From assembly GCA_964252035.1 (NCBI GenBank), contig OZ176202.1: DNA of 64,000 nt; one strand, 5' to 3'. This DNA comes from Podarcis erhardii (lineage: Eukaryota). Below the pieces are notes generated by a model, which did no database searches, was not told the origin of the DNA, and saw only the letters and a program-made list of their open reading frames with translations. This document shows positions 2,513 to 60,443 of the stretch, one piece after another. Each line of letters starts with the position of its first letter. Within the stretch, counting starts at the first letter, position 1. A program made the translations under genes and the position numbers.

Positions 2513-2666
2513 GCTGTCTGATTTTAAGGGAAATAAGAGCAGTCAATTTGCTTGATCATACCAGAGGTCAGTCTAGTCTAACACCCTGTCCCCTGAATCT
2601 GGAAGCTCCATTCAGCTTTCATGGTTAATATAATCTGTATAGTTGTGTTGTGAGTTTTGTACGCAC

Positions 2667-4099: not shown

Positions 4100-4222
4100 C
4101 TGTCATGGCTTGTTGATCATCCACCATTAACTTTAAACTTTTTCCTCTTCGAACTACACGTACTGTGTGCCATTCATTGTCATTGAGGTTATAGCCAGCA
4201 AAAAGGGTTTCTGGACCTTTGC
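4100..4222 (-). CDS. NRXN1: NRXN1 exon E (123 nt; LNS4): (S/G)[40 protein letters not shown](G)
   Basis: Found by reading; absent from the ORF track. Acceptor ccctacag|GCAAAGGT, donor ATGACAG|gtaata; phase 1-1. Confidence 0.96.
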
Positions 4223-4282
4223 CTGTAGGGTATGCCAAACAGTTATTATGGAATCTTTAAATTAGTCAACATGTGAACCTCA

Positions 4283-10867: not shown

Positions 10868-12350
10868 GCAAATTTGTTTAGCGTCATCAGGGGGAGTCCA
10901 ATACATTTTGGCACCAAGGTGAACCACACAATGGTGCCTCCCACCCCCACCAGGGGAGAAGGGGGGAGTGAAGATCTACATCAGGAACAAGGAGGGGATG
11001 AATATAATAATAATAATAGTAATAGTAATAGTAATAGTAATAATAATAATTTATTATTTATACCCCGCCCTTCCTGGTTCAGAAAACTGGGCTCAGGGTG
11101 GCTAACAACAAATTTAAAACACTTAATTGATGCAACAAAAACAGCATAAAATACCATATAAAACATGAATAATAATAAATTCAGAACTCAAAAGTCAATT
11201 TAGGGGGGAAATCCATCCAATAAACATTAGATGATCACCAGGGCTAGCTGGGTAAATTAGTCCTATTTAGGCCAGCGTGGAGACCAGGGGAGAATTAGCT
11301 GTGGGATCCCAGAGCAGGTAATCTTCATAAAAAGGGGAGGGGGAGGGAAGGAAGGAAGGAAGGAAGGAAGGAAGGGGAATAAAGGATCAGGCTAAGTTCA
11401 AATTGAAAGCCAGGCAGAATAGCTCTGTCTTACAGGCCCTGCGGAAGGAAGTTAAATCCTGCAGGGCCCTGGTTACATAGGACAGAGCATTCCACCAGGT
11501 CGTGGCCATCACTGAGAAGGCCCTGGCCCTGGTGGAGGATAATCTGACTTCCTTAGGGCCCGGGACTTCTAAACTATGATTATTCATGGACCTTAAGGTC
11601 CTTTGTGGGGCATACCAGGAGAGACGGTCACATAAATACAAGGGCCCTAAGCCACAAAGGGCTTTAAATGTCAAGACCAGCACCTTGAAACTGACCCTAT
11701 ACTCCACTGGGAGCCAGTGCAACTGGTAAAGCACTGAGTGAATATGCTCCCATGGCAGAGACCCTGTGAGGAGCCTCGCTGCAGCATTCTGCACCCACTG
11801 GAGGTTCTGGGACAGATTCAAGGGCAGCCCCGCATAGAGCAAATTACAGTAGTCAAGCCTGGAGTGACCGTCGCATGGATCACTGTGGCCAGGTCAGGGC
11901 GGGAAAGGTAAGGGACCAACTGCTACATAGGGAATGGGGGGGGGTCAAATCAACCTCACCCAATGGTTGAAGTGGGAATCAAAGGCCGTTGTGGGTGGGG
12001 GAGAAGGAACCCAGTCTGAATAATGCCAGGCAGGTGCAAAGTCCAGGATACCCCAGAAGGAAGCCCTCACCATTTTCTTCCTAGGAACAGGAGGAGCCCA
12101 GAAGCATCTCCTGTTCACCAAGAGGCAGCTGTAGCAGTGGCCCTGGGGGTGGACTGTCAAGGAAGCAGCAGAGCTGGTCTCCAAGGTGTATGCTGAAGTT
12201 GTTTCTGCCATCATGGTGGCAACAGCAGCAACAACAGGCAGTGCATTCATCGGAGGCCAGATCTGCTACCCCGTGGATCCCAAGTCCCCTCACTTTGCCT
12301 CGGGGGGGGGGCACCATGGCAGCACCTTCCAAATTCATCTTATTCCCGTA
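10868..12350. mobile_element. Eroded non-autonomous DNA-transposon-like element, family with a cagggctggcccaa.acattttggca end, interrupted by an L2 insertion; class unresolved
   Basis: Segments align by eye with 33967-34800 and 29028-29120, e.g. gaagatctaca(t/c)caggaacaag and ctcct(g/a)ttcaccaagaggc; the outer boundaries are approximate. Confidence 0.45.
11004..11920 (-). mobile_element. L2-clade LINE, 3' fragment with (AAT)n-type tail
   Basis: Translates LYAGLPL...QNAAARLLTG...LHWLPV, typical of the C-terminal L2 ORF2; related to 37564-38192. Confidence 0.88.
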
Positions 12351-12375
12351 GCCACAATGGTGCTATGATTTATGT

Positions 12376-12615
12376 GAGAGCCAGTGTGGTGTAGTGGTTA
12401 AGAGCGGTAGTCTCGTAATCTGGGGAACCGGGTTCGCGTCTCCGCTCCTCCACATGCAGCTGCTGGGTGACCTTGGGCCAGTCACACTTCTCTGAAGTCT
12501 CCCAGCCCCACTCACCCCACAGAGTGTTTGTTGTGGGGGAGGAAGGGAAAGGAGAATGTTAGCCGCTTTGAGACTCCTTAAAGGAAGTGAAAGGCGGGAT
12601 ATCAAATCCAAACTC
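12376..12615 (+). mobile_element. tRNA-derived SINE (Squam3-like)
   Basis: gagccagtgtggtgtagtggttaagagc A-box head, gggttcgcgtctcc B-box; near-identical to 45003-45258. Confidence 0.8.
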
Positions 12616-27600: not shown

Positions 27601-29919
27601 CCCACGGAAATCAATGGGGAAAAGAAGCATTTAGCTTTGACTCAATCATGCCTCAGTCACTTGGTTTAAAACAAGGGCATGATAGCTACTTTTGTCACAC
27701 AATGTCTGCAACATTTAAAACTCTCTCCCCACACCTCTGCCCACCACAAAAGGAAAACTAGAACGTACTGTACTTACTATAGAAAGTTTGGGAGGTCCAC
27801 AGACTCAAAATAAAATCACAGTCCACAATCCTCTTTCAGAACATAGCATCTTAATCCAAATAATATCAGAAAGGTTAAAAATTTATCAAGCATGATGTAA
27901 GACACATAGGAAAAAACCAATTCAGTCTAAGAGGTCTTATATATTTAGTGTGTAAAAGAAGCCATCACACAAATATAATCTTGCGGGACATAAAAAATAT
28001 CATCGACTGCACACCCTCTTTATTTGGAATAGGGAGTTCAACTCTTGGTTTGTAAGAATATCAACAATGGAAGAAGATTGTGGGGAAAAACATTGCAAGT
28101 GGTGGCAGTGGCAAAAATCTTCCAAAGAAATACATATGCAGAGGCAGATGTGGGCAGGGGTTCTTATATTCTTTCCAATGATCAAGATAATATTCCTTGG
28201 ATTTCCCATAGCAGAAGTAGAGCGTGCCATGCCGCAGAAAGAGAAGGAGGCTGTCTTTCATACATGGAGCTCAGTGGGTGCATTATTCTCCCACAAGCAC
28301 ATCGGGATAATGAGGGATCCAAAAAGCATGGCCTGTGAGGAACGGGCAAAAGCCTAGCCTGAGGAAGAGACAGTTAAGCAGGGAATTAATGCTGTCTTCA
28401 AATATCTGAAGGGGTGTCTAGAAGATGATGGGACAGGCTTGCCCTCTGTTGCTCCAGAGGGCAGGACTGCCTTATCTTGGAGCAAGAGGTCACCAACTCC
28501 TGGCGCTGTTCCCGGACTAAGTCTGTGTGTCAGAGTGTGGTCAGGATGTAAGATAAGATAGACAGAGTGCCATCCCTGCTCCACTGGAACAGCCAAGGCC
28601 ATCCATTGCCGTCACGGACTGATAAAGGAGAGCACTTTGAGCACTTGTTAATACCGCTGGCTTTCTGTTTATACATTGACTCAAAAGCTCAAGTTATGGA
28701 TTTTAGAAATGCTCCCTTGGAGAAGGAAAAATGTGGATTTTGGAGCCCGTTTCAGACTGACTGCCCAGTCAGGTTTCAGGTTTTGGGAACCCATTCCTTC
28801 AGTTGAACACTGCATAAACAGATTTTGATATATCACACTGTGAAAGTTGATTTCAATATGTATATATTTGGAGGACTGGGGGGAAGGAAACCCGTGTACA
28901 GCGCAATCCAATACATATCCACTCGGAAGTAAGTTCCACTGAGCTCAGCGGAATTTACTCCCAGTGTACAAGACTGCAGACTTATGGAGCAATTGTAACT
29001 TCTGACTGGAAAAAGAAGTGGGACTGACAGGGCTGGCCCAAAACGTTTTGGCATCTGAGGCGAGCCACAAAAAGGTGCCGCCGCTGCTGCCAGGGAAGAA
29101 AGGGTGAGTGAAGATACCTTAAAAATGTATGAAGTACTTCCTTTGGCCTTCTAGATTGCTGTTTCTTCTCTATGATTGTGGCCTCTTCAATCCTCCCACT
29201 GCACAACAACAGGCAGAACCAGACATAGGTGCCATCTTGTGCCAAATATTGTGGGTGCCAACGACAAAGGGCTTCAACTTTGCCCATTGACTTTGTGGGT
29301 ACCCAGCATCCACGGCCTACTGGAGTTGGCTCCAGTGGAACCAGGACTACATTCACAGTCAAGTTCTGTTGTGTGTGTTGTGTTGTTTTTTATTATGTGT
29401 TTCTAATTTGTTTGAGAAAATTTTGATATAAATCTTTTTTAAAAAAACAAAACAAAAAGGCAGATAATTCCTCAGTAATTGAGAAATATTAGGGGTATAC
29501 AGTCATCCTTTCCTCATACACAAGACATATTTAGTCTTACTGGAACACGGGGGCAGAACCTCCACAATTGCTTTGACTTTTAGAGAAATTGAAGGATGTT
29601 CTGCAGATGCTAGAAGACTCTGTGGCATTCCTATGTGTGATTCTTTAAACTGTCCTTGAAACTCCTCAGATGTTTGGCCTGAAATTTCAGGGGGTGGGGT
29701 GGGGGTGGGGACAAGGCAACTCTAGGGCAGGCTAAGCAAGCCATGTGCGATGATTTCTTTTCACACCCATGGAATTTGCTACGTCTTTTTCAAATGCAAG
29801 TCATTTTAAGTATGCAAACAGAAACAAAAAAAGGATGCACACTATGTCTTAATCTAAAGTTTGTGAATATTGCATAAATGGAGGAACAATAAGTTTAAAA
29901 ATTTTGAATAGGCACTTAC

Positions 29920-29946
29920 TGGAATTACAGTTAATCCTGATACAGT
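29920..29946 (-). CDS. NRXN1: NRXN1 alternative splice site 3 (SS3) microexon, 27 nt, ACTGTATCAGGATTAACTGTAATTCCA, encoding (D)CIRINCNS(S)
   Basis: Found by reading; absent from the ORF track. Acceptor ttcttccccatctag|, donor |gtaagtgcc; symmetric phase 1-1; peptide matches the known neurexin SS3 insert DCIRINCNS. Confidence 0.95.
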
Positions 29947-31994
29947 CTAGATGGGGAAGAATAGATGAGAAATGAAAATTTATCCTTCAAAGTAATAGCT
30001 GCAGACATCCAATAAAATCACAGTCCACCCTTCCGGGGACAGACACATGCAAACATGGCCACTGCGTGTTCAGATTCTTTCAGTATTGCCATAGAACGCA
30101 GATATATGGTGATAAAAAACTTTATAAATAGAAGTGAGTAGAAATAGAGGATAAAAAAAATATGGCCAATTTCAAACAAAGCTACATGGTGACAAATCTA
30201 AGTGGGGAATAAAGGCTTGTGGAGAAACTGGTCCAGATACTGGATTTAAGCTGGCTGCCACTTTCTCCCCCATATATGAAAGAACAGATTAATCTTCTCA
30301 ATTTTAATTTAAAAAATAATAAAAGTGCTCCGTCACAATGGGGAATAGTACAAGCCAAGCCAATAATCACACATTCTGGATCACAGTTAATACCTCAAAG
30401 GAGGATGCAACTTTAAAAGCTTAAAATTGTAATTGCAACATTCCAACCACCTTAGATGGTCTCTCAATCCTCGGAAATACCCTTAGCTTTTACTGAAGTC
30501 GTTCAGTAAACATAGGAAAAGTGACTTCGCCATCTCCTCTAGAAATCTCCTATTAGATTAAAGCGAACCAATATCATAATTTGCTTTTTGACTTTTGAGA
30601 GGATGCTTTTCGACATCTTCTCTCTTGTGGGCGTTAGCAAATTTATTTCCGCCTTCACGGTGAATAACAGGCGGGGCAATGCTTTTATTTTATTCATAAT
30701 GTAAGGGGAATGTGCACTTTGTATGGGCAAATTGAAACACCCTTCTCGAATTAGCAGCATACTCATTTGTTCCTCTACATGGTCTTTGAGGATCATCAAT
30801 ATTATTGCTTTTATTTCTTAAAAAAATAACAACCTAGATTTTGTTTCCATGTAGCTGAGTTTGTCATGTGTCGTCAACCGCATCAGAAAAGTGGTGGCAA
30901 ACAGCCAAGGCACATTACCTACATGCCTCTGTCTACAGAAAGCTTTCTTGAAAGAGCCCTCTCCTGGCCACTATCCTACAACCATCAAGACTATTAAAAT
31001 AATGCATCAGCTTGCAGGAACTCCAAAATGTCACTAGAGGGCTCTATCTGAAGCTAAAGAAGAGTGTCCTCCCTATTGCAGAATCGAATTAATATAATCA
31101 AAATTCAATTATCTCACATTCCTATACAAAAAAATGGATTTTGAATATATCACTCTGCCCTGCCAACTTTCGCAATTTAAAAGCGAAATCACACCGAAGG
31201 GAAGGGTTTTGTTTTGTTTTGTTTTTATCGCTGTACAAAAAGTCCTGAAAATAATCTCTCTCTCACACACACAAAAAAGGAAGTTGTTCTGGTAAACTTG
31301 CATTTGGTTCCTCGGTGAATAAAGCAACGATCAATTATTTCTAAATGCTATAAAAAAAAAACCTAGGAAAGCATGATATTATTTCTGCAGGAGAGCTTAT
31401 GTGGTTTGTGTTCACATGGCTGTTTGCTGAGGGCCGCAGACTTTGGGCATTGAAGGGTCGTGTTATTTGTGACACACACACACACACAAGATCACTATGA
31501 AGGTGTAGCGGGGGGAGTTCTAAAATAAAATAAAATAAAATCAAAGGAGGGAGGGAGATGGATTTGAAAGGATGTAATGTCAGGCTGCTCTATAGAGAAG
31601 ACCAGAAACAAACAAAAATGTGGCCTGCAATCAGGTTTCTCTTGCTTGCGTATATTTTATGTGTTCTAACACATTAAGCCAAAATCAAGTACAACATGCC
31701 AGAAAGGGCTAAATAGCTTGCTGGTTTTTAACAGAGAAGGTTCTGATTATATGCTGGGGCAAACTCAGTTCGCATGAGCAAACTGTTCAGGACAACAGTG
31801 TGATTTTGGGCTGTGCACACATCACCGGCTTAAAACGCAGCAAGTTTGTTTTCCCTACAGCTGAGCTTCAAATCACATTTGCAAGACACTGTACACATCA
31901 TTACGGCCAGATGTGTTTGGAAGTCGCTCGTTGTGTGTCGACTCCAGGATCCTCTTTGTGTGTGTGCATTTCCCCACTCATGTGTGTGTGTGTG

Positions 31995-32510: not shown

Positions 32511-33658
32511 TGTGTGTGTTTGTGTGATTAGGGCTAGTCTGCTAATAACTCAAATTCCCTTTTCTAGAGCTTCTTTTCAGAAGGAATAGAAAAATCTGAA
32601 GCTGTATACTGTGTCATATTGGTATTAGGCTACAGTCTCTTGTAAAGGTAGACCCCCAGGTTGTGGGTTGTTCATCCTCACATTTCCTTTTGCAAAGAAA
32701 GATTCCCAGGCTGTGTGTCTCAGGCTTGATCAACCTGGTGCACACAGCTAGACTGTTGTTGAAAGTTCACTATCCAGTTCCAAACCGGCTTGTAAAAAGG
32801 GCATGGAGATCTTCGCATTCCTTCTGTTCTCAAATTGGATTAAAGCAGGTCTGGGGTGGGAAACTAATCAAAACACACTACTTCTCAAGAAACTACAGGG
32901 CAGATGTGAATTGTGGCTAACACCATGTGTACACGGCTTCATAAACCAGCAGTGTGAACACACTGGATGCAGAGTCAACCAGAGTGTGTACACAGCCTTA
33001 GAGCCCCAAATGTACATGAGCACCACTTATTATGAAAAGACCGGAATGGCAGCTCTGACTTTAAACTGCTTGTGTGCGTGGACTGCCTGGTTGGGGCAGC
33101 GGAATTTTTCCCAGTTGCCACCCTGCACCCCCTTGGCATCAGAAGAACTGACTCTCTGGAAACCCAAATCCAGTGCTCCACAGAAGCTGCATGAAACATG
33201 AAGCTTGCATGCACAATGCCGACACACCGACCGAGCTTCCCCAGCACCCAGGGGCATGTGTTTTGGACTAGGATTTACTTGTGTAAAGCAGCAATATGGG
33301 AAATCCTGGGCTGAGAAACCCACCTTGTTGGGTAAGATGCAACAAAAAAGACACAAAACAAACAGGTTGCCCTCTAATGCTGGTGGTCTTCTCTTTTTAG
33401 AACAGACTGCGGTTCAGAATTAATAATGGTGGGTTATGGTGGAGTGTGTAAAGATGAAATTAAACTCAACGAATAATGAACTTATGTATGTTGCAAATAT
33501 ATGTATATGCATGAGAACTGCATATATATATATTTCTGTTTCATTTGATTTTTCAGTGGCCAACAGGCTGTTGAATAGGTGTTTGCAGGCAAAGACGCAC
33601 ACCAAAAAAGGATGTTTGAGATGTTAACTTCAGGGTGGGAGTCGGGGAGGGACGTTAC

Positions 33659-33862
33659 CTAGGTTGACTGTTAGCTTAACTCGTCCTGCATCCAGTTCCA
33701 AGCGCAGAGTGTCAGCAGATTCCCTCGAAGTGGTGGCCATTAGAATGCCATAAGCTCGCTGTGACCTGAAGCGCAGGGACACGTCTTCTGCCTCGGTGTG
33801 CATTACCACGGGGAGTTGTATTTTCATAAACATGCTTCCGTCGTAGCTTAAAACGGTTGCCT
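33659..33862 (-). CDS. NRXN1: NRXN1 exon C (204 nt; start of LNS4): (E)[67 protein letters not shown]
   Basis: Acceptor ccttttccag|AGGCAACC, donor AACCTAG|gtaacg; phase 1-1. Confidence 0.97.
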
Positions 33863-34139
33863 CTGGAAAAGGACAAGCGGGAAGATTGAGAGGGAATTAC
33901 AAGGCTGCGTTTCTGCATGCAAGTGAATGCCACGAGTCGCATCATCAAAAAAACTGCTGAGTCAAGCAGGGCTGGCCCAATACATTTTGGCATCTGAGGT
34001 ATTAAGTTGTGAGTGGACATAGCAGACGACACAGAGATTTCTCCAAGTGGTTCTTTATAGTAAGCTGGAACTGAACTGAACTGCAAACAGCTGAACTGAA
34101 CTGGTTTTATAGGCAGCCGGCTGTCAACATTGTAACATC

Positions 34140-40119: not shown

Positions 40120-41427
40120 CTGCCCTATACCCGCAGGTCTCAGGGCGGTTTACAGGATAAAATCAGAATATAAAACCACAAAATACATAATCAAAACAAA
40201 AAAAACCCCCAATAACCCCCACCCCTGAGCATCTCTGCTTACTGACAGTAAATGCAAGATATGAAACCCTGAAAAATCATGCATCCTAGCATCTCCGCCT
40301 CCCCCCCCCCCATATAATTTCTGTTGATAAATGTCATCTTGCACATTTATCTTTTTTGCTGTTGTTGTTGTTGCCTGGCTGAAAACATACACCTGCAAAA
40401 GGCACCGCCAAAAGGCAATCACGTACCACAAGCCCCAATAAAAATCAAAGAGAAAAGCCAAATTATATTGCCATGACATCTGTCCTGCCATCTGCTACAG
40501 CTCCCACAAACAAATTAAACCCATCCAGCGATTATCCTGATGTTTTTTTACTTTTGGCATAATCAGCTCCGGCTTACAGTGGCAAAATAAGCATGGAACA
40601 CTTCAGGTTCAAAGACTATTAAGCCTGCAATCCTGTTCATGTTTTCCTGGAAGAAAGCTCCACTGATCTCAATGGGACTATTTCTGAATAGTTGTGCATA
40701 GGGTGACACTGCTGCTATTCAACCCACCAATGAATTTGGGGGCATGAGTGACCCCAAAGATACAGAACTATGAGACATAACCCCACCCCACCCCAACCCT
40801 TTGCTATTTCACGCTCCTTGTATTCTTGTACGATGAAGGAATGCTAGCTCCCTCCCCATCTCCATTAAAAACAAAGGAGAGAGCAATCCGAGAGTTGAAT
40901 CTTTGAAAAGGGGGAGATCCCTGTGGCACCACTTCGGGTCATGAGCAAATGAGTGTGAGAATGAACACACATTTCATTTTCTGTATTTCATTTCAGCTGA
41001 AATGAAAGCACAGGTGGCAAAGTTACGGTGACTAAATTGGGCCTCGGTGTTTAAAGGTTGCATTTGCGGCTCAGGACCCCAATGCCTCACATGTCGTCTC
41101 TCCCCACATTAACTCACCCAAACCCAGTGTTCATCATCTGACGACCTTCTCTGTGTGCTCTCTCCAAGGGAGGTTCACAGAACAGGCCTTTTCAGTGGTG
41201 GCTCCTCACTTACGGAATGCTCTCCCCAGGGAAGCACACCAGGTGCCACCAATGCCTACTTTTAGGTGCCATGCCATTTTTTTTTATTTTTAATCATTTT
41301 CAGGTTTTTTGGCCTTTTACTTGTGGTGTTTCAGATCCTGCAGCCTCCTTTACTGGGTAGGATGTGTCAGACCTCCTTTTATTTGTAGATGGATGTTTTC
41401 TGTTTTGTTTTAGTTTCATGTTGCTTT

Positions 41428-41430
<3 letters not shown>

Positions 41431-41492
<62 letters not shown>

Positions 41493-41702
41493 TTATTTAT
41501 ACCCCACCCATCTGGCTGGGCTAGCTCAGCCACTATGGGAGGCTTCCAACAAAATATTAAACATTAAAAGCTTCCCTAAACAGGGCTGCCTTCAGATGTC
41601 TTCTAAAAGTCTGGTAGTTGTTGTTCTCTTTGACATCTGGTGGGAGGGAGTTCCACAGGGTGGGTGCCACTACCGCCCTCTGCCTGGTTCCCTGTAACTT
41701 GG
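41431..41702 (-). mobile_element. L2 (second family) 3' end with a long (AAT)n tail
   Basis: Same motif as 34141-34380. Confidence 0.75.
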
Positions 41703-42556: not shown

Positions 42557-44210
42557 AAAATGCTCTTGAGCTACAGCTCCCAGCAGCTGTTATGGCCAAC
42601 AGTCAGGTACAATGGGAATTGGAGTCCAACAGCATCTTGAGTGCTCTGCGTTGTGCTATCTCCATCCTGCACTACCTGACAAACTATTTCAGACCCTAGT
42701 TCTTAGCTACATTGTTCTAAAATTTGTGATTCAAACCAGCATAGTCCCCCACACCCCTCATGCTCCCTGAAGTGGCTTTGCTTGCTTATGTGAACATATT
42801 TTCTTTACAACCCCCCCCCCCAAAAAAAATTTGCTTCCTTTTTGAATGGCACGAACAACATTTTAATTGTCGTGTCTACTGGCAAACGAGAACGGTTTAT
42901 CAGCAACCGCACATGGGTAGGAGCGATAATAGTTCTGTGTGGCAAGCACTGCCTTTGCTGTAGCTTACGGAATCCCAAACACTGTAATCATATTAATGCA
43001 TGACCGTTTGGGATTCAACTATTACTGGAAGGAGGCGAAGCAATGCTTTGAAAAGCTGTTCCTTTCCCTCCCCACCCCACCCCCCAAGATAGGGAAAACC
43101 CTTGGGTAGCGTATAATACTCCAGAAGCTGAATAAACACACAACTGATTTCTGTAGGACAAGCAGCCAGATAACACTGTGAGTACATCATATTAGTATCG
43201 GTCCCAGCAGAGGAGGGTCCGTGTTCCAGAAAATTATATTGGGGGAAATGCCCAAACCATACGTTGTGAGGGATGACAAACAACGTAAACAGAAAGAAAT
43301 TCCATGCCCTGTCAAAGATACTTACTGAAAATCCTTTTGCTGAAGCATGCCATTAAACTTGCAAAGAATGGTGGTGGGGTTTGTGGGGTTTTTTTAGTAG
43401 ATTTGCATATGCTTGTTCCTTTCTCCAGTGGCTGGGATATGTAAAAATATTCCCTAGTTCTATTTTATTTCAAAAACTGTAGGTTTCTATCTCTCCCTCC
43501 TTCTCTTTCTCTTTCATAATGCTGCACTCTTTAAGAAGATGGGGAGGGGAGCAGTGAGGAGAAAAATGTCCCATATGTAATAGCAGGATTTTGCCACAGG
43601 GTGGTACACCATGCATATTTAACTGAAGAGTTTTGTAATTCATCTGACAGTCTAGTTAGGCCCCCTCTGCCAGCCGCAGTCCACCAGTAATAGGAACAAT
43701 CTGGAGGCATCAAAAATAACTTGATTTCTGCCAAAGGCTTGCATCTTCTAAAATAAGAAACAAGGACTCCCTTCTCAGAATAACGTTTCATTTACAGCAG
43801 CACAAATGGAAGGCTCGGTCTTAACTAGTGCTAAGCTTATAAGGAAGGTGGGTTGTTGTTGTTTTGACAAAGCTTTTGTTAAGGGACTGAAATTAAAACT
43901 GCTGATATTGCAATGACATGTGTGGTCTGACCATATTTGGATTGCTGTGTATAAATTTGGTCACCTCACCTCAAAAAGGATATTGTAGGATGTGGGGAAA
44001 GGATCAGAAAAGAGCGAAATTGAACGTTCTGATTCATTCCTCGGTTTCTTAGTCATTATGCCAGGGGTCACCAACATGGTACTTGTGGGTTCCAACATCA
44101 ACTTCATTGGACTGGTCAAGTTGTTCAGATGCCTGATTATTCTCTTCCAAAACAACTACCCTATTCCAAACTTTAAAATGGAAAGCATAATGCTGATGGT
44201 CAACAAAAGA

Positions 44211-44562
44211 GGTTTAAAGACTCTCTCAAGGCAAATCTTAAAAAGTGTAGTCTAAACACTGACAACTGGGAAACACTGGCCTGTGAGTGCTCCAGTTGGA
44301 GAACAGCCTTTACCAAAGGTGTCATGGGCTCTGAAGATGCTCGAACGCAGGATGAAAGGGAGAAACGTGCTAAGAGGAAGGCACGCTTGGCAAACCCTCA
44401 CAGTGATCAACTCCTGCCCGGAAACCAGTGTCCCTACTGTGGAAGGAGGTGTGGATCCAGAATTGGCCTTCGCAGTCACTTACGGACTCGCTGCTAAGAC
44501 CATGTTCATGGAAGACAATCTTACATGGCTATGAGTGATCGCCAGAGAATAAGAATAAGAAT
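44211..44562 (+). mobile_element. RTE-clade LINE 3' end with C-terminal CxxC..HxxxH-like motif and (AAGAAT)n tail
   Basis: Reads FKDSLKANLKKCSLNTDNWETLA...QCPYCGRRCGSRIGLRSHLRT. Confidence 0.75.
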
Positions 44563-44656
44563 TGTGGGTACAGATAGGTAGCCGTGTTGGTCTGCCATAG
44601 TCAAAACAAAAAATTCCTTCCAGTAGCACCTTAAAGACCAACTAAGTTAGTTCTAG

Positions 44657-44694
44657 GTATGAGCTTTCGTGTGCATGCACACTTCTTCAGATAC
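44657..44694 (-). ncRNA. Minimal type-I hammerhead ribozyme motif on the NRXN1 sense strand
   Basis: GUAU-CUGAAGA-A-GUGUG(CAUG)CACAC-GAA-AGCU-C^AUAC: 4-bp stem I, 5-bp stem II, palindromic AGCU in place of stem III, CUC cleavage triplet. Confidence 0.75.
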
Positions 44695-44700
44695 GAAGAA

Positions 44701-44738
44701 GTGTCTGAAGAAGTGTGCATGCACACGAAAGCTCATAC
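44701..44738 (+). ncRNA. Mirror-image hammerhead ribozyme motif on the antisense strand
   Basis: GUGU-CUGAAGA-A-GUGUG(CAUG)CACAC-GAAAGCUC^AUAC; stem I contains one G-U pair. Confidence 0.7.
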
Positions 44739-45002
44739 CTAGAACTAACTTAGTTGGTCTTTAAGGTGCTACTGGAAGGAATTTTTTGTTTTAAGAATTG
44801 TGGGTTCCATTCTGCCTGCTCCTATGGTGCCCATGAAAGGTCTAAGCAAAGATTCCTCAAAAAAATCCACAGTACGTGAGAGGCTATTTCTTCTTCCTGC
44901 TCAGCTCCTATTTGCACCGGCTCAGCCGCTCATACACCAAACACATCCCTGTAAATATGCCCACATTTCACAAGATGCCAGGATTGGGCACCCACCTTCC
45001 TG

Positions 45003-45258
45003 GAGCCAGTGTGGTGTAGTGGTTAAGAGCGGTAGTCTCCTAATCTGGGGAACCGGGTTCGCGTCTCCGCTCCTCCACATGCAGCTGCTGGGTGACCTTG
45101 GGCCAGTCACACTTCTGTGAAGTCTCTCAGCCCCACTCACCTCACAGAGTGTTTGTTGTGGGGGAGGAAGGGAAAGGAGAATGTTAGCCACTTTGAGACT
45201 CCTTAAAGGGAGTGAAAGGCGGGATATCAAATCCAAACTCTTCTTCTTCTTCTTCTTC
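45003..45258 (+). mobile_element. tRNA-derived SINE (Squam3-like) with (TTC)n tail
   Basis: Near-identical to 12376-12615. Confidence 0.8.
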
Positions 45259-45353
45259 CTATCTGTTCTGAGCACAGAAGAGCTTCTCTCTGTGGGTGAC
45301 TGCCAGCCAGCATGGTGAAGGTTGATGTAAGTGCCTTTTACTCATGGATCAGG

Positions 45354-46544: not shown

Positions 46545-47095
46545 TCAGGCTGCAAACCCATTTAAAGTGCACACACCCCAAGAATCCTGTGAGGTGTCTC
46601 TTCCAAGCCTACCCTGAGCTGTCGATGTCTGTGGGGAGGGTGTGACAAAAAAAAAAAAAAAATTGTGCTGGGTACCACCTGACCTTGCTACATATCTGAT
46701 CAGGTGAAAGAAGTGACCAAACCATTGTGCAGCTGTCCTTTTCTGTGTTTTGAGCTGTGCCAGTCATTACGCCATTCCCCCAGAGCAGCCATTGTGTGAC
46801 TGGCACCCATGGCATCCTCAACATTCCAAACGTGCCCACTGGGCCGGAGAAGGTTGTCAACCCCTGGTATGCATGTTGGTTCTCTGAGATGTAAACCAGG
46901 GCCTTCCCACCCATTCCCTTAACCTCAATTCTACATTAGCCTTCACAACACAACACAGTAGTGGTAGCTGCTGCTACATCACACTGCTAGTTTCTCACCT
47001 GCCAATCAGTATCAAGACCCTCAGCAGTTTTGAAGTCATCTGTGAAAGAAAAGGGAATCTGTGTTCTAACCAAATGGGTAAATGAATGGGCCTAC

Positions 47096-47479
47096 CTCTC
47101 TCACACGATCTGCCCAGATAGCCTGTACCGGAACAATCACAGACGTATCTATTCCAGCCGTCCCTACAAGCTCCACTGTTCCTGCAGGGATTACTCAAGC
47201 ACGGCTTTGCTGTTTCTCTCGAACACGAGGGTTTCACCCCAGAGGTGCTCTGGATTTCTGCCATTTGGCGGATGTCTTTGCTTTGGCCATCGATAAACAG
47301 GTCCCGAATGCAGCCCACATAACCATAATTGAGAAGCGCTGTCCAGACCTCTGTTGGAAAGACGAGGCCTGCTTTGTTTTCCGGCAAGCCTCCAAGGTAC
47401 AAGTCGTCGTCCAGGTCCAAGATCTCACTCTCTCCAGGTGCAGTATATGGCGTGCGCATAGTGTTGACGGAAATGGTAC
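47096..47479 (-). CDS. NRXN1: NRXN1 exon B (384 nt; second half of LNS3 plus EGF2): (G)[30 protein letters not shown]...[15 protein letters not shown](E)
   Basis: Acceptor cctaaacag|GTACCATT, donor GAGAGAG|gtaggc; phase 1-1; EGF cysteine pattern [12 protein letters not shown]...C-D-C...C. Confidence 0.97.
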
Positions 47480-47589: not shown

Positions 47590-48030
47590 CACGTACCTAT
47601 GGTGCCACCTCTCCTGGTATGCCCTGCGGAGGACCTTAAGGTCCACACATGACAACATTTTGGAGATTGCTGGTCGCAAGGTTAGATTGGTCGCAACTAG
47701 GGCCAGGGCCTTTTCAGTACTGGCCCTGACTTGGTGGAACACTCTGTCACAAGAAACTAGGGCCCTGTGGGACTTGACATCTTTCCACAGAGCTGTTCTG
47801 CCTGGCTTTTGGTTTGGACTCAGTCTGACCCTTATGTTTCCCTCCCCTTATGGTTTTGATCTATGGGCCACTTTTAAAATGAGGCTGCATTTTAAATTGC
47901 ATTTTAACCTGTATTTTAAATTGTTTTGTTTTTTTCCTATTACGTTTTTACTGTAAATTTATTGGTGTTAACCACCCTGAGCCCGGCTCTGGCTGGGGAG
48001 GGTGGGGTATAAATAAAAATATTATTATAA
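47590..48030 (+). mobile_element. L2 LINE 3' fragment about 110 bp upstream of the exon B acceptor
   Basis: ctagggccagggccttttcagt...ccaccctgagcccggctctggctggggagggtggggtataaataaaa. Confidence 0.8.
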
Positions 48031-51018
48031 GCTTTTATATCCTGCTTGTAGGACAGATCCATGTTCCCAAAATTACTTTTAATCACAGAAGGAAAAATGA
48101 TTACAAGAAAATAAAAAGGTTTAATAACAGTGCAGACTTTTCAAAAGCACAACATATGGGGGGGGGAATGGAGACTTCTTCAATCATCGTTATAGAAATC
48201 AATTAAAGGGAATTTGCATTAAAGATGAATGTGTTGTATAAAGTTTTCCCATTATGTTTGTTTGCTTATAAAACTAGACCTGAAACTGGGCATATCTGAT
48301 GATCCAGAGTGCTGCTGATACCATGCCTTTACACTCCATGCCATTGCTTTGGGAAAATAACACACAGAGGAATGACTGAGTCTCCTGCTTCAATCAATGG
48401 ATCTGGGGAAACCAATCAACTAATGACTGAATGTGTGAATGCAATTTCAAGAAATGGAAACAAAACAAATGGAACTTTTTAAAAAGCAGAAAAATAAAAT
48501 AAAATGGGTTTCTTGCACACCCCTACAACCTGCGAAAACAGTAGTGGCACAGAAGGGAACAACTGCATAAATAAAGCAAGGGTAACCAATATACATTTCA
48601 AGGGAGCCAATGGAGGTAGGTTTTCACCCTCCTCCTGTGCACAGAGAGGGAAAGGATTAACTTGACCTCTCTGAAAGAGGTTCTTCCAAAGAATGTGTCA
48701 CTGTGGAGAAGACTCTGAATCCATTAGCCACCATTTGCATCTTGGGTGGTGGGGCTGCCCATAACAAGTCCATTATAACAGATTTAAGTCCGAAGCATCA
48801 GAGGACTACCTGGCAGCAGTCCAAACCCAGTCCACCAGGGTCTCTTTAAGCCTGGGACACCCAAGGCAGGACCTGTGGAGCCCATACCCACTGATGAGCC
48901 AGGCCCTTCTACACCAGGCACCTGCATCTAATAGCAGCTGGTGACACAGTGTGCATAGGGCTCTGTTGCCCCCTTGGCATCGCAACACTTCAGGTCATTG
49001 CCTGAGAGGAAGAGGTGGAGGTGTGGAGAGCTTGGAACATTGTGGTACATGGCATCACAGCCACTCTGATGCTTCTGCCACTATACACCACACAACACTG
49101 TGCTCCCCACCATCCTGCCTGTTGCTAATGTCCGCACCCTCATGCCAACCTGGCAATTTTGCAGGTAACACACCTGGAAGAACTCTCAGAAATGGGAAGT
49201 CCAGTGGCCAGTTTCTCAAACGGGGATGTGAGAAGAGCCTGACCCTGGTGCAACATGGTGTCAGATGCATAAAGCCTTCAGTTTACCCTGAGCTGCTTGC
49301 TTGTAGCTGTCCATGGTGCTGCAACCACTAGCTTGTCTTCCTCCCTATCGCCATCCTGCCCCTTTGCCCAATCGTGGGATCCTTGTTGAGAGCAGGCCAG
49401 GCCAGGCCAATGGAGCAGCAAGAAAGGGAATGGCTGATCGCCACATGTAAAGCACAGCTTGAAAACTGTGTAAATATTAAATAAACACTAACATACACGC
49501 AAGACTGGGTATTCATCTGCTCTGTGTAAGCACATTTCCATAATGCATCTGTTCTGTGCTTGGGGGTACACTATGATCAATATTGCATGGTTCAGCTATA
49601 GGGCACTGGTGGACGGACAGTCTTTGCCTTCGATTGCCTTTTGGCTCCTTTCATTTAAAATTTATAACCCTGCCTGCTCATCCTACAGACTAGGCACACA
49701 TGACAACAGATTAAAAATATAAAAAAGACATCAAAATTTTAAACCACATCCACACTTTGCTTATCATGTGCACAGTTTAAACAATGTTGTTGCCAGTTAA
49801 AACATGCTTCCTAAAAGCATAGGTTCCTGCCTGTACTAGAACCAAGTATGTTTGCAAGACCTCACAAGACCTAAGATTAGATCACAAATTACGAAAAACA
49901 GGGCTATCAGCTGCTACTAGCAACAGTGGTTAGGTTCGACAGCCACTGCTGGAGGCAATATGCTTCTGAGCATCAGTTGCTAGGATTCACAAGTAGAAAG
50001 AGCGCTCTTGTGCTCAGGTCCTGCTCTTGTGTTTGCCACAGGCATCTGGCTGGCCACTGTGAGAACAGAATGCAGAACCAGACGGACCACTGGCCTGATC
50101 CAGCAGGGTCTTCTTATGTTCCTATCATTCTGCTAAGCCAAAGCGCCACAAAGCTCAGTTCTAAGGTCCTGCAAACTGCCAAGCTGCCACTGCAAAACAT
50201 TAAATCATATAATTCTAGAGCCCCAGGTTTCACATTTTAATTAACTCTGAATTGGCGACTCAGCTTCTTGCCAGCAGACTATGACAGATCAGCATTATTT
50301 ACAAAGGAGAGGGAAATGTAAAGGGCAGGCAGAAGGTCTTAGATATCCTTGGTTTTCAGAAACATGGTTTTCCTTCACAGGTACATCCAATTAAATATTT
50401 TCTTCCAGTGTTTAAACAGGGATGTTTAACCTTTGATGTTATGAAACACAGCAGTGCCAGGTGGAGCCTCTGATCTAATTTACAGTTAATTTACTGATCC
50501 ACACACTGCCCATATGGCCTGAACCATATATGTTCTTTGTATGTTCTTATATGCAACACACTCCCCGGGGAATGCTGTACATTTTGCACTCATGTAACAT
50601 CTGCTATTTTTTTATGTTGCTAAGAAAGCGCAGAGCAATAAAATGAAAACAAAGCAGCCTTTCCCACAACATATTGTGCATGCTGCGGACTGCAGAACAC
50701 AAAAATATACTGCAGTTTTCAGGGAGGAGGTGGTAAGACTAGTTTCTACCTTAGCCTTGCTGCCACCTTTTAAAACCTCAAGATGCCCAGGAACTGGACC
50801 TGACAGAGTAAACATTCTGCTATGCAGTGGCTTTCCTTCTGAACAGGATCTGTTTCCCCTCTATGAAAGAGTCCATGGGATTCAAACCCATAATCCTCTC
50901 AGCACAGATCTAGCAAACCTGCATGGTCTAAACCCGGGGTTGTCAACCTGGTCCCTACCGCCCACTAGTGGGTGATTCAGGATTCAGGATTCTAGGTGGG
51001 CGGTAGGGGGTTCTACGG

Positions 51019-51543
51019 CTCAAGCAGGCTGGTACACAGGCTGAGACCCTACCTGCCCACTGACTGTCTCACTAGAGTGGTGCATGCTCTGGTTATCTCC
51101 CACTTGGACTACTGCAATGCACTCTATGTGGGGCTACCTTTGAAGGTGACCCGGAAACTACAACTAATCCAGAATGCGGCAGCTAGACTGGTGACTGAGG
51201 GCGGCCGCCAAGACCACAGAACACCGGTCTTGAAAGACCTACACGGGCTTCCAGTATGTTTCTGAGCACAATTCAAAGTGTTGGAGCTGATCTTTAAAGC
51301 CCTAAACGGCCTTGGCCCAGTATACCTGAAGGAGTGTTTCCACCCCCATCATTCTGCCCGGACACTGAGGTCCAGTGCCAAGGGCCTTCTGGTGGTTCCC
51401 TTGCTGTGAGAAGCCAAGTTACAGGGAACCAGGCAGAGGGCCTTCTCGGTAGTGGCACCCGCCCTGTGGAACTCCCTCCCACAAGATGAAAAAGAGAACA
51501 ACAACTAGCAGACTTTTAGAAGACATCTGAAGGCAGCCCTGTT
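51019..51543 (+). mobile_element. L2 LINE fragment (second family)
   Basis: RLRPYLPTDCLTRVVHALVISHLDYCNALYVGLPLKVTRKLQLIQNAAARLVT. Confidence 0.85.
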
Positions 51544-54164: not shown

Positions 54165-54585
54165 CAGAGATTCTGGGCACATCAGGTTAAGAAGGATATT
54201 GACAAGTGTGTGAAGAGGAGGGCAACCGAGAAAATCAAGGGTCTGGAAACCAAGCCTTATGAGGAACAGTTGAGGGAGCTGGGCATGTTTAGCCTGGAGA
54301 AGAGGAGACTGAGAGGTGATATGATATCCATCTGGATATCTGGAAGATAGAGAAAGCCCTGTTTTCTGCTTCTCCCGAGGGTAGGTTCTGATCCGATGGA
54401 TTCACGTTACAAGACATGAGATTCCAACTAAACATCAGGAAGAACATGACATGAAGAGCAGAGACAGTGGAATGGACCACCTTGAAAAGTGGTGGGTGCT
54501 CCATTTTGGAAGTTTTAATCTCCATGGCCATCTCTCTGGGATTCTGTAGCTGCGATTCCTGCATTACAGGGGGCTGGACTAGATG

Positions 54586-54633
<48 letters not shown>

Positions 54634-55085
54634 TAATTCATTATTTATACCGTGCCCATCTGGCTGGGCCTCCCCAGCCACTCTGGGAGGCCTCCAACAA
54701 AATATTAAAATCAAACATTAAAAGCTTCCCTAAAAAAGGGCTGCCTTCAGATGATTTCTAAAAGTCTGGTAGTTGTTGTTCTCTTTGACATCTGGTGGGA
54801 GGGCGTTTCACAGGGTGGGCGCCACTACTGAGAAGGCCCTCTGCCTGGTTCCCTGTAACCTCACTTCTCACAGTGAGGGAACCACTAGAAAGCCTTCGAT
54901 GCTGGACCTCAGTGTCCGGGCTGAACGATGGGGCTGGAGACACTCCTTCAGGTATACTGGGCTGAGGCCGTTTAGGGCTTTAAAGGTCAGCACCAACACT
55001 TTGAATTGTGCTCAGAAACGTACCAATCTAGGTCTTTCAAGACCGATGACCCTTGGGGTCCCTTTCAACTCTACAATTCTGTGAT
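54165..55085 (+). mobile_element. Older CR1 3' fragment interrupted by an L2 insertion
   Basis: [30 protein letters not shown]; the CR1 3'UTR resumes at 55045 (gatgacccttggggtccctttcaactctacaattct). Confidence 0.75.
54587..55044 (-). mobile_element. L2 (second family) nested in CR1, with gatga duplication
   Basis: gatga at 54582-54586 and 55045-55049. Confidence 0.8.
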
Positions 55086-58609: not shown

Positions 58610-59617
58610 GATTTACTGTGTTGAATACAACACATTAATTTCAATGGGTCTGCTCTGAGCATAATTTAGTCATATACAAGCCAGTGCTGCTGTTGCCCAA
58701 AAATTCCAGGTACTGTATAAAAAACTGAAGAACATGGGTTCTAGCTGCAGACATACAATCTAAGATATGCAGAGTGGCAGGAAAAAGTAAAGTAAAAGAA
58801 GAGAAGGGTAAATCAAGGAGCCCAAGTGTTTTCTCCTAGGAGTGGAAAAGCCATTTGGGGAGGCAATCTTAAGTGGGAATAAAATATCAAGAAGGGAAGA
58901 TTAAGACACCTCTCCTGCCTGCCTGTCATTCACTCTTTATTTCATCCTCTCTTGTTTATTTCAGCCACTCTTTATTAAAGCCTTTTCTTTAACATTCTGC
59001 CAGGGAGGAGAACCTTGGATCTGTCCATCACACACAATTTGGCCTTCGCACTATAAATTCCAAGAACACCATGATGTCATAAATTGCAGTCCTATTATGC
59101 AGCACAATGGTTATATATCACCACATTCCATTTTACACTTAGCAGAAACTTGGCTTGAAAGCGCACTGTCGTTGTTAGGAGAAATATTGCAACACAGACT
59201 AACATATTCTTCTAACTAATAGCTTTTTGGATTAATTGCCAAAGCCAAATCAATTGCAAGCGGGGTGAGAGAAAAAGGCTCCACAGCAAACAAATGGCTG
59301 TCGCTGGAAAGAGGAGTTCTATCTCTTGTCTTCCTCCTTTTAGCCAATGACTAGTGCTACAAAATCTTGGTTCCAAGTCTCCCTGGCCATCTTCCATTGC
59401 ACTAGGTGCTGCCTGCAGGGACAAGGAAATGTGGGAATACAGTAAGACATTACCAAGGAGAGAGAGAGACTGAGATTCAGGGGTGCTGTTTTTTGATGCA
59501 GCACCTGCACCTGTCATAATGACTTCAAAGGATGTCATTATATTGCAATAGCAATTGCAACACACAACACCCTTGCTATTTTGTCTACAATACACAGAAG
59601 GGTAAACCCAAACTTAC

Positions 59618-60056
59618 CAGATCGTCCGTCTCTTTGAAAGTCAACGTGGTACCATTCACCGTCATTCACCTTCTTTTGCAAAGCTTTTGTTTTAATCGTA
59701 CCAGAACCCATGTCCAGCAGCAGGTAGAGGTGGCCATCAAGCATCTCAATGGCAAAGAAGTCAACTTTGACCATTTGTGGGTGTTTAGCATCTTTCTGAT
59801 GCCGCGGTTTGCCGTGGCTAAAAAGTATCAGCCCATTTGGCTCGGTGGTGCGGAAATCAAACGATATCGAGCCCGTTTTCTTGGCGTTCCACTTTGGCAA
59901 AGAGATAAAAGATTCTGGTGTTTCAAAAGTGATTGGATCCAAGGTTGCCACATTTTCACATTTAAATGCTACCACACCATGGATCTTCATCTTAGGATCT
60001 CCTTGTTTGGCAAGTCGAGAAAGTTCCAGCCTTACATCGTTGTTTTTGTATACAAC
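59618..60056 (-). CDS. NRXN1: NRXN1 exon A (439 nt; end of LNS2 and first half of LNS3): [23 protein letters not shown]...[12 protein letters not shown](G)
   Basis: Acceptor ttgcttgcag|GTTGTATAC, donor CGATCTG|gtaagt; starts in phase 0, ends in phase 1; lies within ORF 59538..60158(-). Confidence 0.97.
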
Positions 60057-60443
60057 CTGCAAGCAAAGAACAGCAGTTACCAGAATGAATTTAACTGTAC
60101 AAGCAAGAATGAATGTTAACTTCTGTAATTCCATTTTTGAAATTAATAAAAGCTGCACACATTTTACAAAACCTCATGTTATCAGGACCAGCCACACTCT
60201 TATGAAGATCCATGTTAAATATCCACGTTGCGCTCTCCCCAATCCTCAAGTTGTGCCCTGCATCCAGACTTTAAAAGTCTGTATGCAGCTCAGACGTTCT
60301 CGCTACAGTTTTGATGCTGCAGTTTGGTGTCAAACCTCAGGAAAGTTTCACTGAGTCTTCCAATCCTTTGGCCATCATCCAACCATCCACTGAGGTATAT
60401 TTCAGCTCCCATCTCTTTCCTCCATCCTGCAATGATGGAAGTA

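What the first reader, a model, noticed from the sequence alone, without database searches (positions are those of the whole stretch)
44657..44738. Paired hammerhead ribozyme cores, one per strand, each locked by its own upstream antisense copy inside a NRXN1 intron
Seen: the gene strand (44694 to 44657) reads GUAU CUGAAGA A GUGUG-CAUG-CACAC GAA AGCU C^AUAC. All catalytic core nucleotides are present, with perfect stem I (GUAU/AUAC), stem II, a self-complementary AGCU replacing stem III, and predicted cleavage between 44661 and 44660. The mirror motif is on the + strand at 44701-44738. Established: Penelope-like elements carry such minimal type-I hammerheads, which work as dimers via the palindromic stem III. 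Inference: on either strand the complement is transcribed first, so the ribozyme should be sequestered in the hairpin. That would explain why a self-cleaving motif is tolerated in an essential neuronal pre-mRNA, and would make it a latent cleavage site if the hairpin is opened by editing, helicases or loss of one arm.
Basis: partly seen in the sequence, partly recalled or inferred. Interest (0 to 1): 0.85.

Follow-up and report, generated by a model that had tools for sequence, protein, structure and literature searches.

The report
Penelope retroelement fold-back with hammerhead motifs
The two hammerhead ribozyme motifs are real, but they are the two arms of one short, head-to-head insertion of a Penelope-like retroelement in a neurexin-1 intron, a well-described and common kind of repeat in reptile genomes and most likely an inert passenger.

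Summary
Observation confirmed. An identical 34-nt minimal type-I hammerhead core lies at 44657-44690 (-) and 44705-44738 (+). None is expected by chance. The predicted cut follows C at 44661 (-) and at 44734 (+).

Both cores lie in one discrete insertion:
- a 14-bp target-site duplication (44556-44569 and 44792-44805);
- a one-sided 33-nt 'tail' (44570-44602);
- two 92-nt arms, 99% complementary, around a 6-nt spacer.

Target duplication, one-sided tail, an inverted 5'-truncated copy and a minimal hammerhead near the 3' end are the published hallmarks of Penelope-like element (PLE) integration.

The window does carry NRXN1-alpha exons on the minus strand. The element lies about 2.3 kb into a roughly 13-kb intron.

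The 'lock' holds thermodynamically: forcing the ribozyme helices costs about 60 kcal/mol. But it is a by-product of the insertion architecture and is not needed to explain tolerance. Each transcript carries only one sense core, published PLE hammerheads do not cleave as monomers, and the Anolis one needs its element's protein.

No Rfam hammerhead model matches. Unchecked notes from this scan describe similar palindromes in at least six other introns of this genome.

Verdict: an already known kind of repeat, of low interest.

The parts
44556..44569 (.). Left copy of the target-site duplication, TAAGAATTGTGGGT. It lies in an (AGAATA)n-like tail of an older LINE-like remnant.
   Evidence: Perfect 14-nt direct repeat exactly flanking the insertion; sequence read.
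44570..44602 (-). One-sided 33-nt 'tail' extension. Its sense strand reads GACTATGGCAGACCAACACGGCTACCTATCTGT. It continues the left arm outward and has no counterpart on the right side.
   Evidence: It lies between the target duplication and the inverted repeat. It matches the optional 30-40-bp PLE tail (PMC8557442; PMC11167929). The outer end is 91 nt past the cut site. No significant fold of its own.
44603..44694 (-). Left arm: a 5'-truncated copy of the element's 3' end, sense on the minus strand, which is the NRXN1 pre-mRNA strand.
   Evidence: Inverted-repeat arm, 92 nt, 99% complementary to the right arm.
44657..44694 (-). Minimal type-I hammerhead motif on the gene strand. Predicted cut after C at 44661.
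   Evidence: HHR-competent fold -6.0 kcal/mol when isolated.
44695..44700 (.). 6-nt spacer (GAAGAA) at the head-to-head junction. One arm mismatch lies next to it (GUAU versus GUGU).
44701..44792 (+). Right arm: a 5'-truncated copy of the element's 3' end, sense on the plus strand. It ends without a tail, 58 nt past the cut site.
44701..44738 (+). Minimal type-I hammerhead motif on the plus strand. Predicted cut after C at 44734.
44792..44805 (.). Right copy of the target-site duplication, TAAGAATTGTGGGT. Its first T is shared with the end of the right arm.
46995..47459 (-). Open segment holding the upstream NRXN1-alpha exon (end of a laminin-G domain plus an EGF domain). Context only; splice sites were not mapped.
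   Evidence: phmmer against PDB: neurexin-1-alpha 3qcw/3r05 residues 536-658, E 4e-93.
33633..33896 (-). Open segment holding the next NRXN1-alpha exon downstream ([10 protein letters not shown]...VKLTVNL). Context only.
   Evidence: Found in the minus-strand translation. It fills the gap between residues 658 and 723 left.

Best explanation
The finding is one retrotransposition event of a Penelope-like element (PLE), or of a short non-coding element mobilised by PLE machinery. The insertion is about 223 bp (44570-44792) and landed in an AT-rich, microsatellite-like stretch of an NRXN1 intron.

Shown directly:
- a 14-bp target-site duplication;
- two severely 5'-truncated copies of the element's 3' end, joined head to head;
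- a 33-nt tail on one side only;
- a complete minimal type-I hammerhead core in each arm.

Inferred from published PLE biochemistry: the element's GIY-YIG endonuclease nicks both DNA strands. Reverse transcription starts at one of two internal sites on the template RNA, which gives ends with or without the tail. Either priming from both nicks or a template switch then produces the inverted pair.

Inferred for the NRXN1 pre-mRNA: the antisense arm is transcribed first, so the RNA folds into a near-perfect 92-bp hairpin and the single sense hammerhead never adopts its catalytic fold. Even unfolded it would be a monomer of a ribozyme type that needs a second copy, and probably the element's protein, to cut. 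The ribozyme motif is therefore carried baggage of the repeat, and the insertion is most likely neutral. The long double-stranded stem would be an obvious substrate for RNA editing. It is also a young DNA palindrome.
For: Motif. Exact cores on both strands with 0 expected by chance. [quoted passage not shown] It also has a 4-bp helix I and a longer helix II (PMC4209133).

Insertion anatomy. Inverted repeat plus perfect 14-bp flanking direct repeat. A 33-nt extension on one side only. Craig et al. 2021 describe exactly this: high 5' truncation, an inverted 5'-truncated copy adjacent, and a 30-40-bp tail at one end (PMC8557442).

Geometry. Frangieh et al. 2024 (PMC11167929) found that the Anolis Poseidon protein cleaves and extends both strands, prefers AT-rich sites with ATT, and starts reverse transcription 111-118 nt into the ORF with the cut site at +26. 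That is 85-92 nt past the cut, and the tail is the stretch between the two start sites. Here the ends lie 91 and 58 nt past the cut, 33 nt apart.

Energetics. Hairpin -167.8 kcal/mol, z = -27.9. Ribozyme helices have about 0 probability in that context, and enforcing them costs about 60 kcal/mol.

Gene context. NRXN1-alpha exons on the minus strand.

Recurrence. Unchecked notes from this scan report similar Penelope palindromes with twin hammerheads in other introns of the same genome.
Against: - No hammerhead family of Rfam 15 matches, either at gathering score or at E <= 10 on the 261-nt stretch. Classification as a hammerhead rests on the descriptor and published consensus features, not on a curated model.
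- No PLE reverse transcriptase or endonuclease ORF is nearby, and no PLE consensus library was available, so homology of the arms to a named PLE family was not shown.
- The sense arm has stops in all three frames downstream of the core (my reading of the sequence). In the characterised Anolis Poseidon the ORF starts in stem II.
- The tail has no significant stem-loop.
- No other copy lies in the window, and none was retrievable from the public collections offered.
- Cleavage activity, transcription of the hairpin and editing are all untested.
Confidence: 0.9

Rival explanations
1. The fold-back is a functional or selected safety lock. It is what allows a self-cleaving motif to persist in an essential neuronal pre-mRNA, and it leaves a latent, conditionally activated cleavage site that editing, helicases or loss of an arm could expose.
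For: The hairpin does abolish the ribozyme fold thermodynamically. The antisense arm is transcribed first on either strand. A preprint reports modest depletion of retrozyme copies from introns in Xenopus, so some selection against genic copies may exist.
Against: The arrangement arises automatically from PLE integration (PMC8557442, PMC11167929). Only one sense core is present per transcript, and monomers of this ribozyme type are inactive. Dimers are weak, and the Anolis one needs protein. Some 42-44% of the related Xenopus copies sit in introns anyway. Notes from the same genome also list solo sense-strand copies in introns (unchecked). There is no conservation or expression evidence.
Confidence: 0.05
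2. The arms do not come from an autonomous PLE. They come from a short non-coding, PLE-dependent element: a reptile 'non-LTR retrozyme' or mini-Penelope unit of about 180-200 nt, inserted as a fold-back. This is a sub-variant of the main explanation.
For: All three frames of the sense arm are closed downstream of the core (sequence), unlike Poseidon of Anolis. Li et al. report retrozyme consensus lengths averaging 176 bp in Reptilia and derive them from PLE terminal repeats. Unchecked scan notes mention tandem hammerheads 184-202 nt apart in this genome.
Against: In other PLE clades the hammerhead lies in non-coding sequence near the 3' end (PMC8557442), so closed frames do not exclude an autonomous parent. 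No family consensus was available to compare.
Confidence: 0.4
3. The hairpin is a functional RNA gene in its own right, such as a microRNA or endo-siRNA precursor hosted in the intron.
For: A long, near-perfect hairpin. Sub-threshold covariance-model matches to several microRNA precursor families: MIR1222 61 bits against a threshold of 90, mir-559 61 against 95, mir-466 44 against 85.
Against: All matches fall well below the gathering scores and occur on both strands, as expected for any long palindrome. A 92-bp perfect stem is not microRNA-like. The object is a young repeat insertion with a target duplication.
Confidence: 0.03
4. The palindrome is an assembly or library artefact, for example a fold-back chimera of reads, and the real locus holds a single arm.
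For: PLE inverted structures are known to trouble assemblies (PMC8557442).
Against: A perfect target-site duplication flanks the whole two-arm unit. The tail is asymmetric. The arms differ by one mismatch and are separated by a unique 6-nt spacer. A chimeric fold-back would not create these.
Confidence: 0.02

Closest known systems
Minimal type-I hammerhead ribozymes of Penelope-like elements (Cervera & de la Pena 2014, PMC4209133; Lunse, Weinberg & Breaker, RNA Biol, as cited in PMC6765202)
   Same: Complete catalytic core, an extra nucleotide between A9 and G10.1, a G10.1-C11.1 pair, and no real helix III but a palindromic AGCU. Helix I is short (4 bp) and helix II longer. Such motifs are reported in reptiles and also as pairs on opposite strands 100-700 bp apart.
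   Different: Here the two cores are only 10 nt apart (end of one to start of the other) in a tight palindrome. This particular sequence variant was not found in the texts I could read. Activity is untested.
Canonical PLE insertion architecture: pseudo-LTRs, an inverted 5'-truncated copy, and a 30-40-bp tail (Craig et al. 2021, PMC8557442; Frangieh et al. 2024, PMC11167929, Poseidon of Anolis carolinensis)
   Same: Target duplication at an AT-rich site containing ATT, a one-sided 33-nt tail, inverted 5'-truncated copies, and insertion ends at 58 and 91 nt past the hammerhead cut site. The Poseidon reverse-transcription start lies 85-92 nt past the cut.
   Different: Extremely short: no ORF and no direct pseudo-LTR. 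The region downstream of the core is non-coding, whereas in Poseidon the ORF starts in stem II.
Animal non-LTR retrozymes: tandem type-I hammerhead units giving circular RNAs (de la Pena et al. 2020, PMC7229834; Li et al. 2026 preprint, 10.64898/2026.07.22.740005)
   Same: Short non-coding sequence carrying a type-I hammerhead and related to PLE terminal repeats. Reptile units average about 176 bp.
   Different: Retrozymes are direct tandem repeats, so two sense ribozymes bracket a unit and can dimerise. Here the copies are inverted, so no unit can be excised or circularised.
Conserved intronic self-cleaving ribozymes of amniotes: HH9/HH10 hammerheads and the CPEB3 HDV-like ribozyme (cited in PMC7229834; PMC10274809)
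   Same: A self-cleaving ribozyme motif on the sense strand of an intron of a neuronal or essential gene.
   Different: Those are single-copy, deeply conserved, canonical and fast enough to compete with splicing. This one is a young repeat copy of a minimal, monomer-inactive type, it gave no match to any Rfam family including HH9 and HH10, and it is buried in a hairpin.

Membership tests
PLE minimal type-I hammerhead (min-HHR) | Conserved core: C3 U4 G5 A6 N7 G8 A9 ... G12 A13 A14, A15.1/U16.1, and a non-G at position 17 | tested here: met
   CUGAAGA ... GAA A..U C on both strands. The descriptor hits only these two sites, with 0 in 200 shuffles.
PLE minimal type-I hammerhead (min-HHR) | [quoted passage not shown] | tested here: met
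   An extra A follows CUGAAGA. Helix II is GUGUG/CACAC, starting with G and ending with C. The feature list comes from PMC4209133.
PLE minimal type-I hammerhead (min-HHR) | No stable helix III; palindromic 15.2-16.2 that allows dimerisation | tested here: met
   A15.1 G C U16.1 = AGCU, which is self-complementary.
PLE minimal type-I hammerhead (min-HHR) | Short open helix I (4-5 bp) and a longer helix II | tested here: met
   Helix I is GUAU/AUAC (minus strand) and GUGU/AUAC (plus strand). Helix II has 5 bp with a 4-nt loop, within a 14-nt palindrome.
PLE minimal type-I hammerhead (min-HHR) | Self-cleavage, as a dimer | not testable with these tools
   Needs in vitro transcription. Published relatives are inactive as monomers and weak as dimers, or depend on the element's protein.
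Rfam hammerhead families (Hammerhead_1, Hammerhead_3, Hammerhead_II, HH9, HH10) | Covariance-model score at or above the family's gathering threshold | tested here: not met
   No Rfam match in the window at gathering score. No hammerhead family is listed even at E <= 10 on 44550-44810.
Penelope-like element insertion | Target-site duplication flanking the unit | tested here: met
   TAAGAATTGTGGGT at 44556-44569 and 44792-44805, 14/14 identical.
Penelope-like element insertion | Optional 30-40-bp tail at one end only | tested here: met
   33 nt at 44570-44602, on the left side only. Definition in PMC8557442 and PMC11167929.
Penelope-like element insertion | An inverted 5'-truncated copy adjacent, forming inverted repeats | tested here: met
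   92-nt arms, 99% complementary, 6-nt spacer.
Penelope-like element insertion | Sequence homology to a PLE with a reverse transcriptase / GIY-YIG endonuclease ORF | not testable with these tools
   No repeat library was available, and no other copy lies in the window or in the collections offered. The supplements of PMC11167929 do not hold the sequence.
Non-LTR retrozyme | Two or more hammerheads in direct (tandem) orientation bracketing a unit | tested here: not met
   The only two cores in the 64 kb lie on opposite strands.
microRNA precursor families (MIR1222, mir-559, mir-466 and others) | Score at or above the gathering threshold | tested here: not met
   Best scores are 61 bits against a threshold of 90 or 95, and matches occur on both strands.

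The most novel reading that the evidence does not exclude
Fold-back PLE insertions might be preferentially retained in introns over solo sense-strand copies because the antisense arm silences the ribozyme. If so, the hairpin would be a built-in safety that shapes which insertions survive in long neuronal genes. A-to-I hyper-editing or unwinding of the stem in neurons could then expose a weak, condition-dependent cleavage site, or simply a strong editing and dsRNA-sensing site, in NRXN1 pre-mRNA.
Probability: 0.04. Interest if true: 0.55.

Novelty: already known. Interest (0 to 1): 0.12.

Why it matters
It matters little as a discovery. Minimal hammerheads in Penelope-like elements, their dimer requirement, and the inverted, tailed insertion architecture are all published. 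The same object recurs across this genome.

It is useful as annotation:
- it explains both this finding and the separate 'perfect palindrome' note on the same stretch as one young retroelement insertion;
- it shows that the end geometry measured in vitro for the Anolis Poseidon element (two reverse-transcription start sites about 33 nt apart, 85-92 nt past the ribozyme cut site) is mirrored in a genomic copy.

One question remains open and could be answered genome-wide: whether intact sense-strand PLE hammerheads in introns are under any selection.

Tried and rejected
- Rfam at gathering score on the whole window and at E <= 10 on 44550-44810. No hammerhead family appeared, only sub-threshold hairpin-type microRNA and sRNA matches on both strands. 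I rejected these as generic palindrome hits.
- blastn of the element against the window. No further copy, so no family alignment or covariation test was possible.
- Exact and degenerate pattern scans of metagenome contigs and viral contigs. Zero hits, and the collections offered do not hold vertebrate genomes.
- Supplements of PMC11167929 and PMC4209133, searched for the core sequence. Nothing is held there.
- Lunse et al. (PMC5785218) is not held, so I cite it only through PMC6765202.
- Fold of the tail as an 'AC-rich stem-loop'. Not significant (z = +0.7), so I do not claim that structure.
- Look-up of the scan's own index by sequence. Blank.
- A snap-back origin through GAAGAAG/CTTCTTC microhomology at the junction. 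I could not distinguish it from priming at both nicks, and left it open.
- Assembly artefact. Rejected because of the target duplication, the asymmetric tail and the spacer.

Full report

Yes. The minus strand from 44694 to 44657 reads GUAU-CUGAAGA-A-GUGUG-CAUG-CACAC-GAA-AGCU-C-AUAC. The plus strand carries the same 34-nt core at 44705-44738, preceded by GUGU instead of GUAU. Its stem I therefore has one G.U wobble.

The 34-mer occurs exactly twice in the window, once per strand, against 0 expected in dinucleotide shuffles.

I also wrote a relaxed minimal-hammerhead descriptor. It asks for a 4-bp helix I, CUGANGA, an optional extra base, a helix II of at least 4 bp, GAA, A15.1...U16.1 with a palindromic inner pair, and a non-G at position 17. 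It found only these two sites in 64 kb on both strands, and none in 200 shuffles.

The predicted cut sites follow C17 at 44661 (minus) and 44734 (plus).

**2. What the motifs sit in**

The repeat finder shows a 92-nt inverted repeat, 44603-44694 / 44701-44792, 99% complementary with a 6-nt spacer. A perfect 14-nt direct repeat, TAAGAATTGTGGGT, lies at 44556-44569 and 44792-44805.

Between the left direct repeat and the left arm lie 33 extra bases (44570-44602). They have no partner on the right.

The object is therefore a discrete insertion of about 223 bp with this layout:
- target-site duplication;
- one-sided tail;
- arm;
- 6-nt junction;
- arm;
- target-site duplication.

In each arm the ribozyme-sense strand points outward. 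The arms are thus two 5'-truncated copies of the same 3' end, joined head to head. No other copy of the element lies in the window.

**3. Identification**

*The ribozyme.* Cervera & de la Pena (PMC4209133) defined minimal hammerheads in Penelope-like elements (PLEs). They listed traits that emerged beyond their search descriptor:
- a conserved G10.1-C11.1 pair;
- palindromic 15.2-16.2 positions;
- a short helix I of 4-5 bp and a longer helix II.

All of these are present here. The authors also report such motifs in reptiles, and pairs of them on opposite strands close together.

*The insertion.* Craig et al. (PMC8557442) describe the PLE insertion architecture. It shows strong 5' truncation, often an inverted 5'-truncated copy adjacent that forms inverted repeats, and a 30-40-bp tail at one end only.

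*The mechanism.* Frangieh et al. (PMC11167929) reconstituted the Poseidon element of Anolis carolinensis.
- The protein cleaves and extends both DNA strands.
- It prefers AT-rich sites with ATT.
- Reverse transcription starts internally, 111-118 nt into the ORF, while the hammerhead cut site is at +26. The start is therefore 85-92 nt past the cut.
- The tail is the stretch between two start sites.

In this window the insertion ends lie 91 nt (tail side) and 58 nt (other side) past the cut sites, 33 nt apart. The target duplication contains AATT. This quantitative match is the strongest argument that PLE machinery made the insertion.

*Limits.* No Rfam hammerhead model matches, even at E <= 10. 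No repeat library or second copy was available to show homology to a named PLE family. The sense arm is closed in all three frames downstream of the core, unlike Poseidon, whose ORF begins in stem II. The parent may therefore be another PLE clade, or a short non-coding PLE-dependent unit. A recent preprint derives vertebrate non-LTR retrozymes from PLE terminal repeats and gives an average unit of 176 bp in reptiles.

**4. Gene context**

Stop-free segments on the minus strand match neurexin-1-alpha structures:

| Segment (minus strand) | 3qcw residues | E-value |
|---|---|---|
| 59541-60173 | 379-533 | 2e-118 |
| 46995-47459 | 536-658 | 4e-93 |
| 4089-4256 | 723-767 | 3e-37 |
| 2615-3067 | 764-895 | 2e-93 |

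The missing stretch ([10 protein letters not shown]...VKLTVNL) lies at 33633-33896.

PDB neurexin entries are almost all NRXN1, so paralogue assignment rests on the near-identity of the matches, not on a comparison with NRXN2 or NRXN3.

**5. The 'lock'**

As RNA, the full element folds into one hairpin of -167.8 kcal/mol. Shuffles average -48 kcal/mol, giving z = -27.9.

The isolated 38-nt motif can take the ribozyme-competent fold (helices I and II) at -6.0 kcal/mol, close to its optimum of -6.8 kcal/mol.

In the 250-nt context the pair probabilities of helices I and II are about 0. Enforcing those helices raises the energy from -170.1 to -110.0 kcal/mol. On the pre-mRNA the antisense arm (44792->44701) is made first.

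The sequestration inference is therefore sound. Three points argue that it is incidental.

1. The architecture is the ordinary product of PLE integration. According to unchecked notes of this scan, it recurs in other introns of the same genome (HTT, ARID5B, SLC6A13, ZBTB20, MAPK14 and a V2R gene), with different palindrome lengths. That suggests independent events.
2. A transcript contains one sense core and one antisense copy. The dimer needed by this ribozyme type cannot form in cis.
3. Published relatives argue against activity.
   - Monomers show no detectable cleavage and dimers cleave poorly.
   - The Anolis Poseidon hammerhead cut only with its protein present, and RNA-seq showed no ends at its site.
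   - In Xenopus, 42-44% of related copies are intronic, though modestly depleted after normalisation.

**6. Most likely mechanism and rivals**

*Best explanation (0.9).* A young, neutral, 5'-truncated fold-back PLE-type insertion whose hammerhead cores are inherited baggage. In the pre-mRNA it forms a long dsRNA stem. It may be edited, and as DNA it is a palindrome.

*Open sub-question (about 0.4).* The parent was a non-autonomous retrozyme-like unit.

*Rivals:*
- a selected lock or latent cleavage site (0.05);
- a hairpin RNA gene (0.03; all microRNA model matches are far below threshold and symmetrical on both strands);
- an assembly artefact (0.02; contradicted by the target duplication, the asymmetric tail and the spacer).

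How the two arms were joined, by priming from both nicks or by a template switch, cannot be decided from one copy.

**7. Verdict**

However, the object is an ordinary copy of a published class of repeat, and the proposed regulatory meaning is unsupported.

The scan has noted this kind of element many times elsewhere in this genome: 110 notes mention hammerhead, Penelope and ribozyme together.

Interest is low. The only part worth pursuing is a genome-wide test of orientation and architecture bias of intact cores in introns.

Noticed in passing
window 59541-60173, 46995-47459, 33633-33896, 4089-4256, 2615-3067, 82-444 (all minus strand): Successive NRXN1-alpha coding exons covering laminin-G and EGF domains (3qcw residues about 379-895 and beyond). 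They are separated by introns of about 12, 13, 29, 1 and 2 kb. Exact splice sites were not mapped.
   Followed up: partly
window 29852-29986 (-): An open segment encoding ...DCIRINCNSSK..., which resembles the small alternatively spliced insert of neurexin-1 at splice site 3. I recognised it from memory of the protein, and it was not verified against a reference.
   Followed up: no
window 44183-44555 (+): A decayed LINE-like ORF tail ending in a C2H2-like zinc finger (CPYCGRRCGSRIGLRSHLRTRC, then a stop at 44495-44497). The Pfam zinc-finger matches are below threshold. An (AGAATA)n-like tail follows, and the PLE inserted into it.
   Followed up: partly
window 44922-45275 (-) and 12366-12614 (-): Two copies of another interspersed repeat. 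Their translations are nearly identical (SLDLISRLSLPLRSLK..NILLSLPPPQQTLC...). One copy lies immediately right of the PLE insertion.
   Followed up: no
window 11390-11893 (-), 47660-47956 (+), 50996-51262 (+), 54773-55081 (+): Several copies of a repeat whose translation carries LDYCN..Y.GLP...LQ.VQNAAARL-like motifs. There was no Pfam match for the copy tested. This is probably a decayed retroelement family.
   Followed up: partly
window about 41400-41560, 54560-54640, 10900-11100, 2290-2440: Long (AAT)n/(ATT)n-type microsatellites, seen as poly-N, poly-I, poly-L or poly-Y runs in translation. They often abut the repeats above.
   Followed up: no
window 44669-44682 and 44713-44726: Helix II plus its loop is a perfect 14-nt palindrome (GTGTGCATGCACAC). 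Two sense copies are predicted to pair as a domain-swapped duplex (-30.6 kcal/mol) rather than through the 4-bp AGCU contact. This could compete with the productive dimer.
   Followed up: partly
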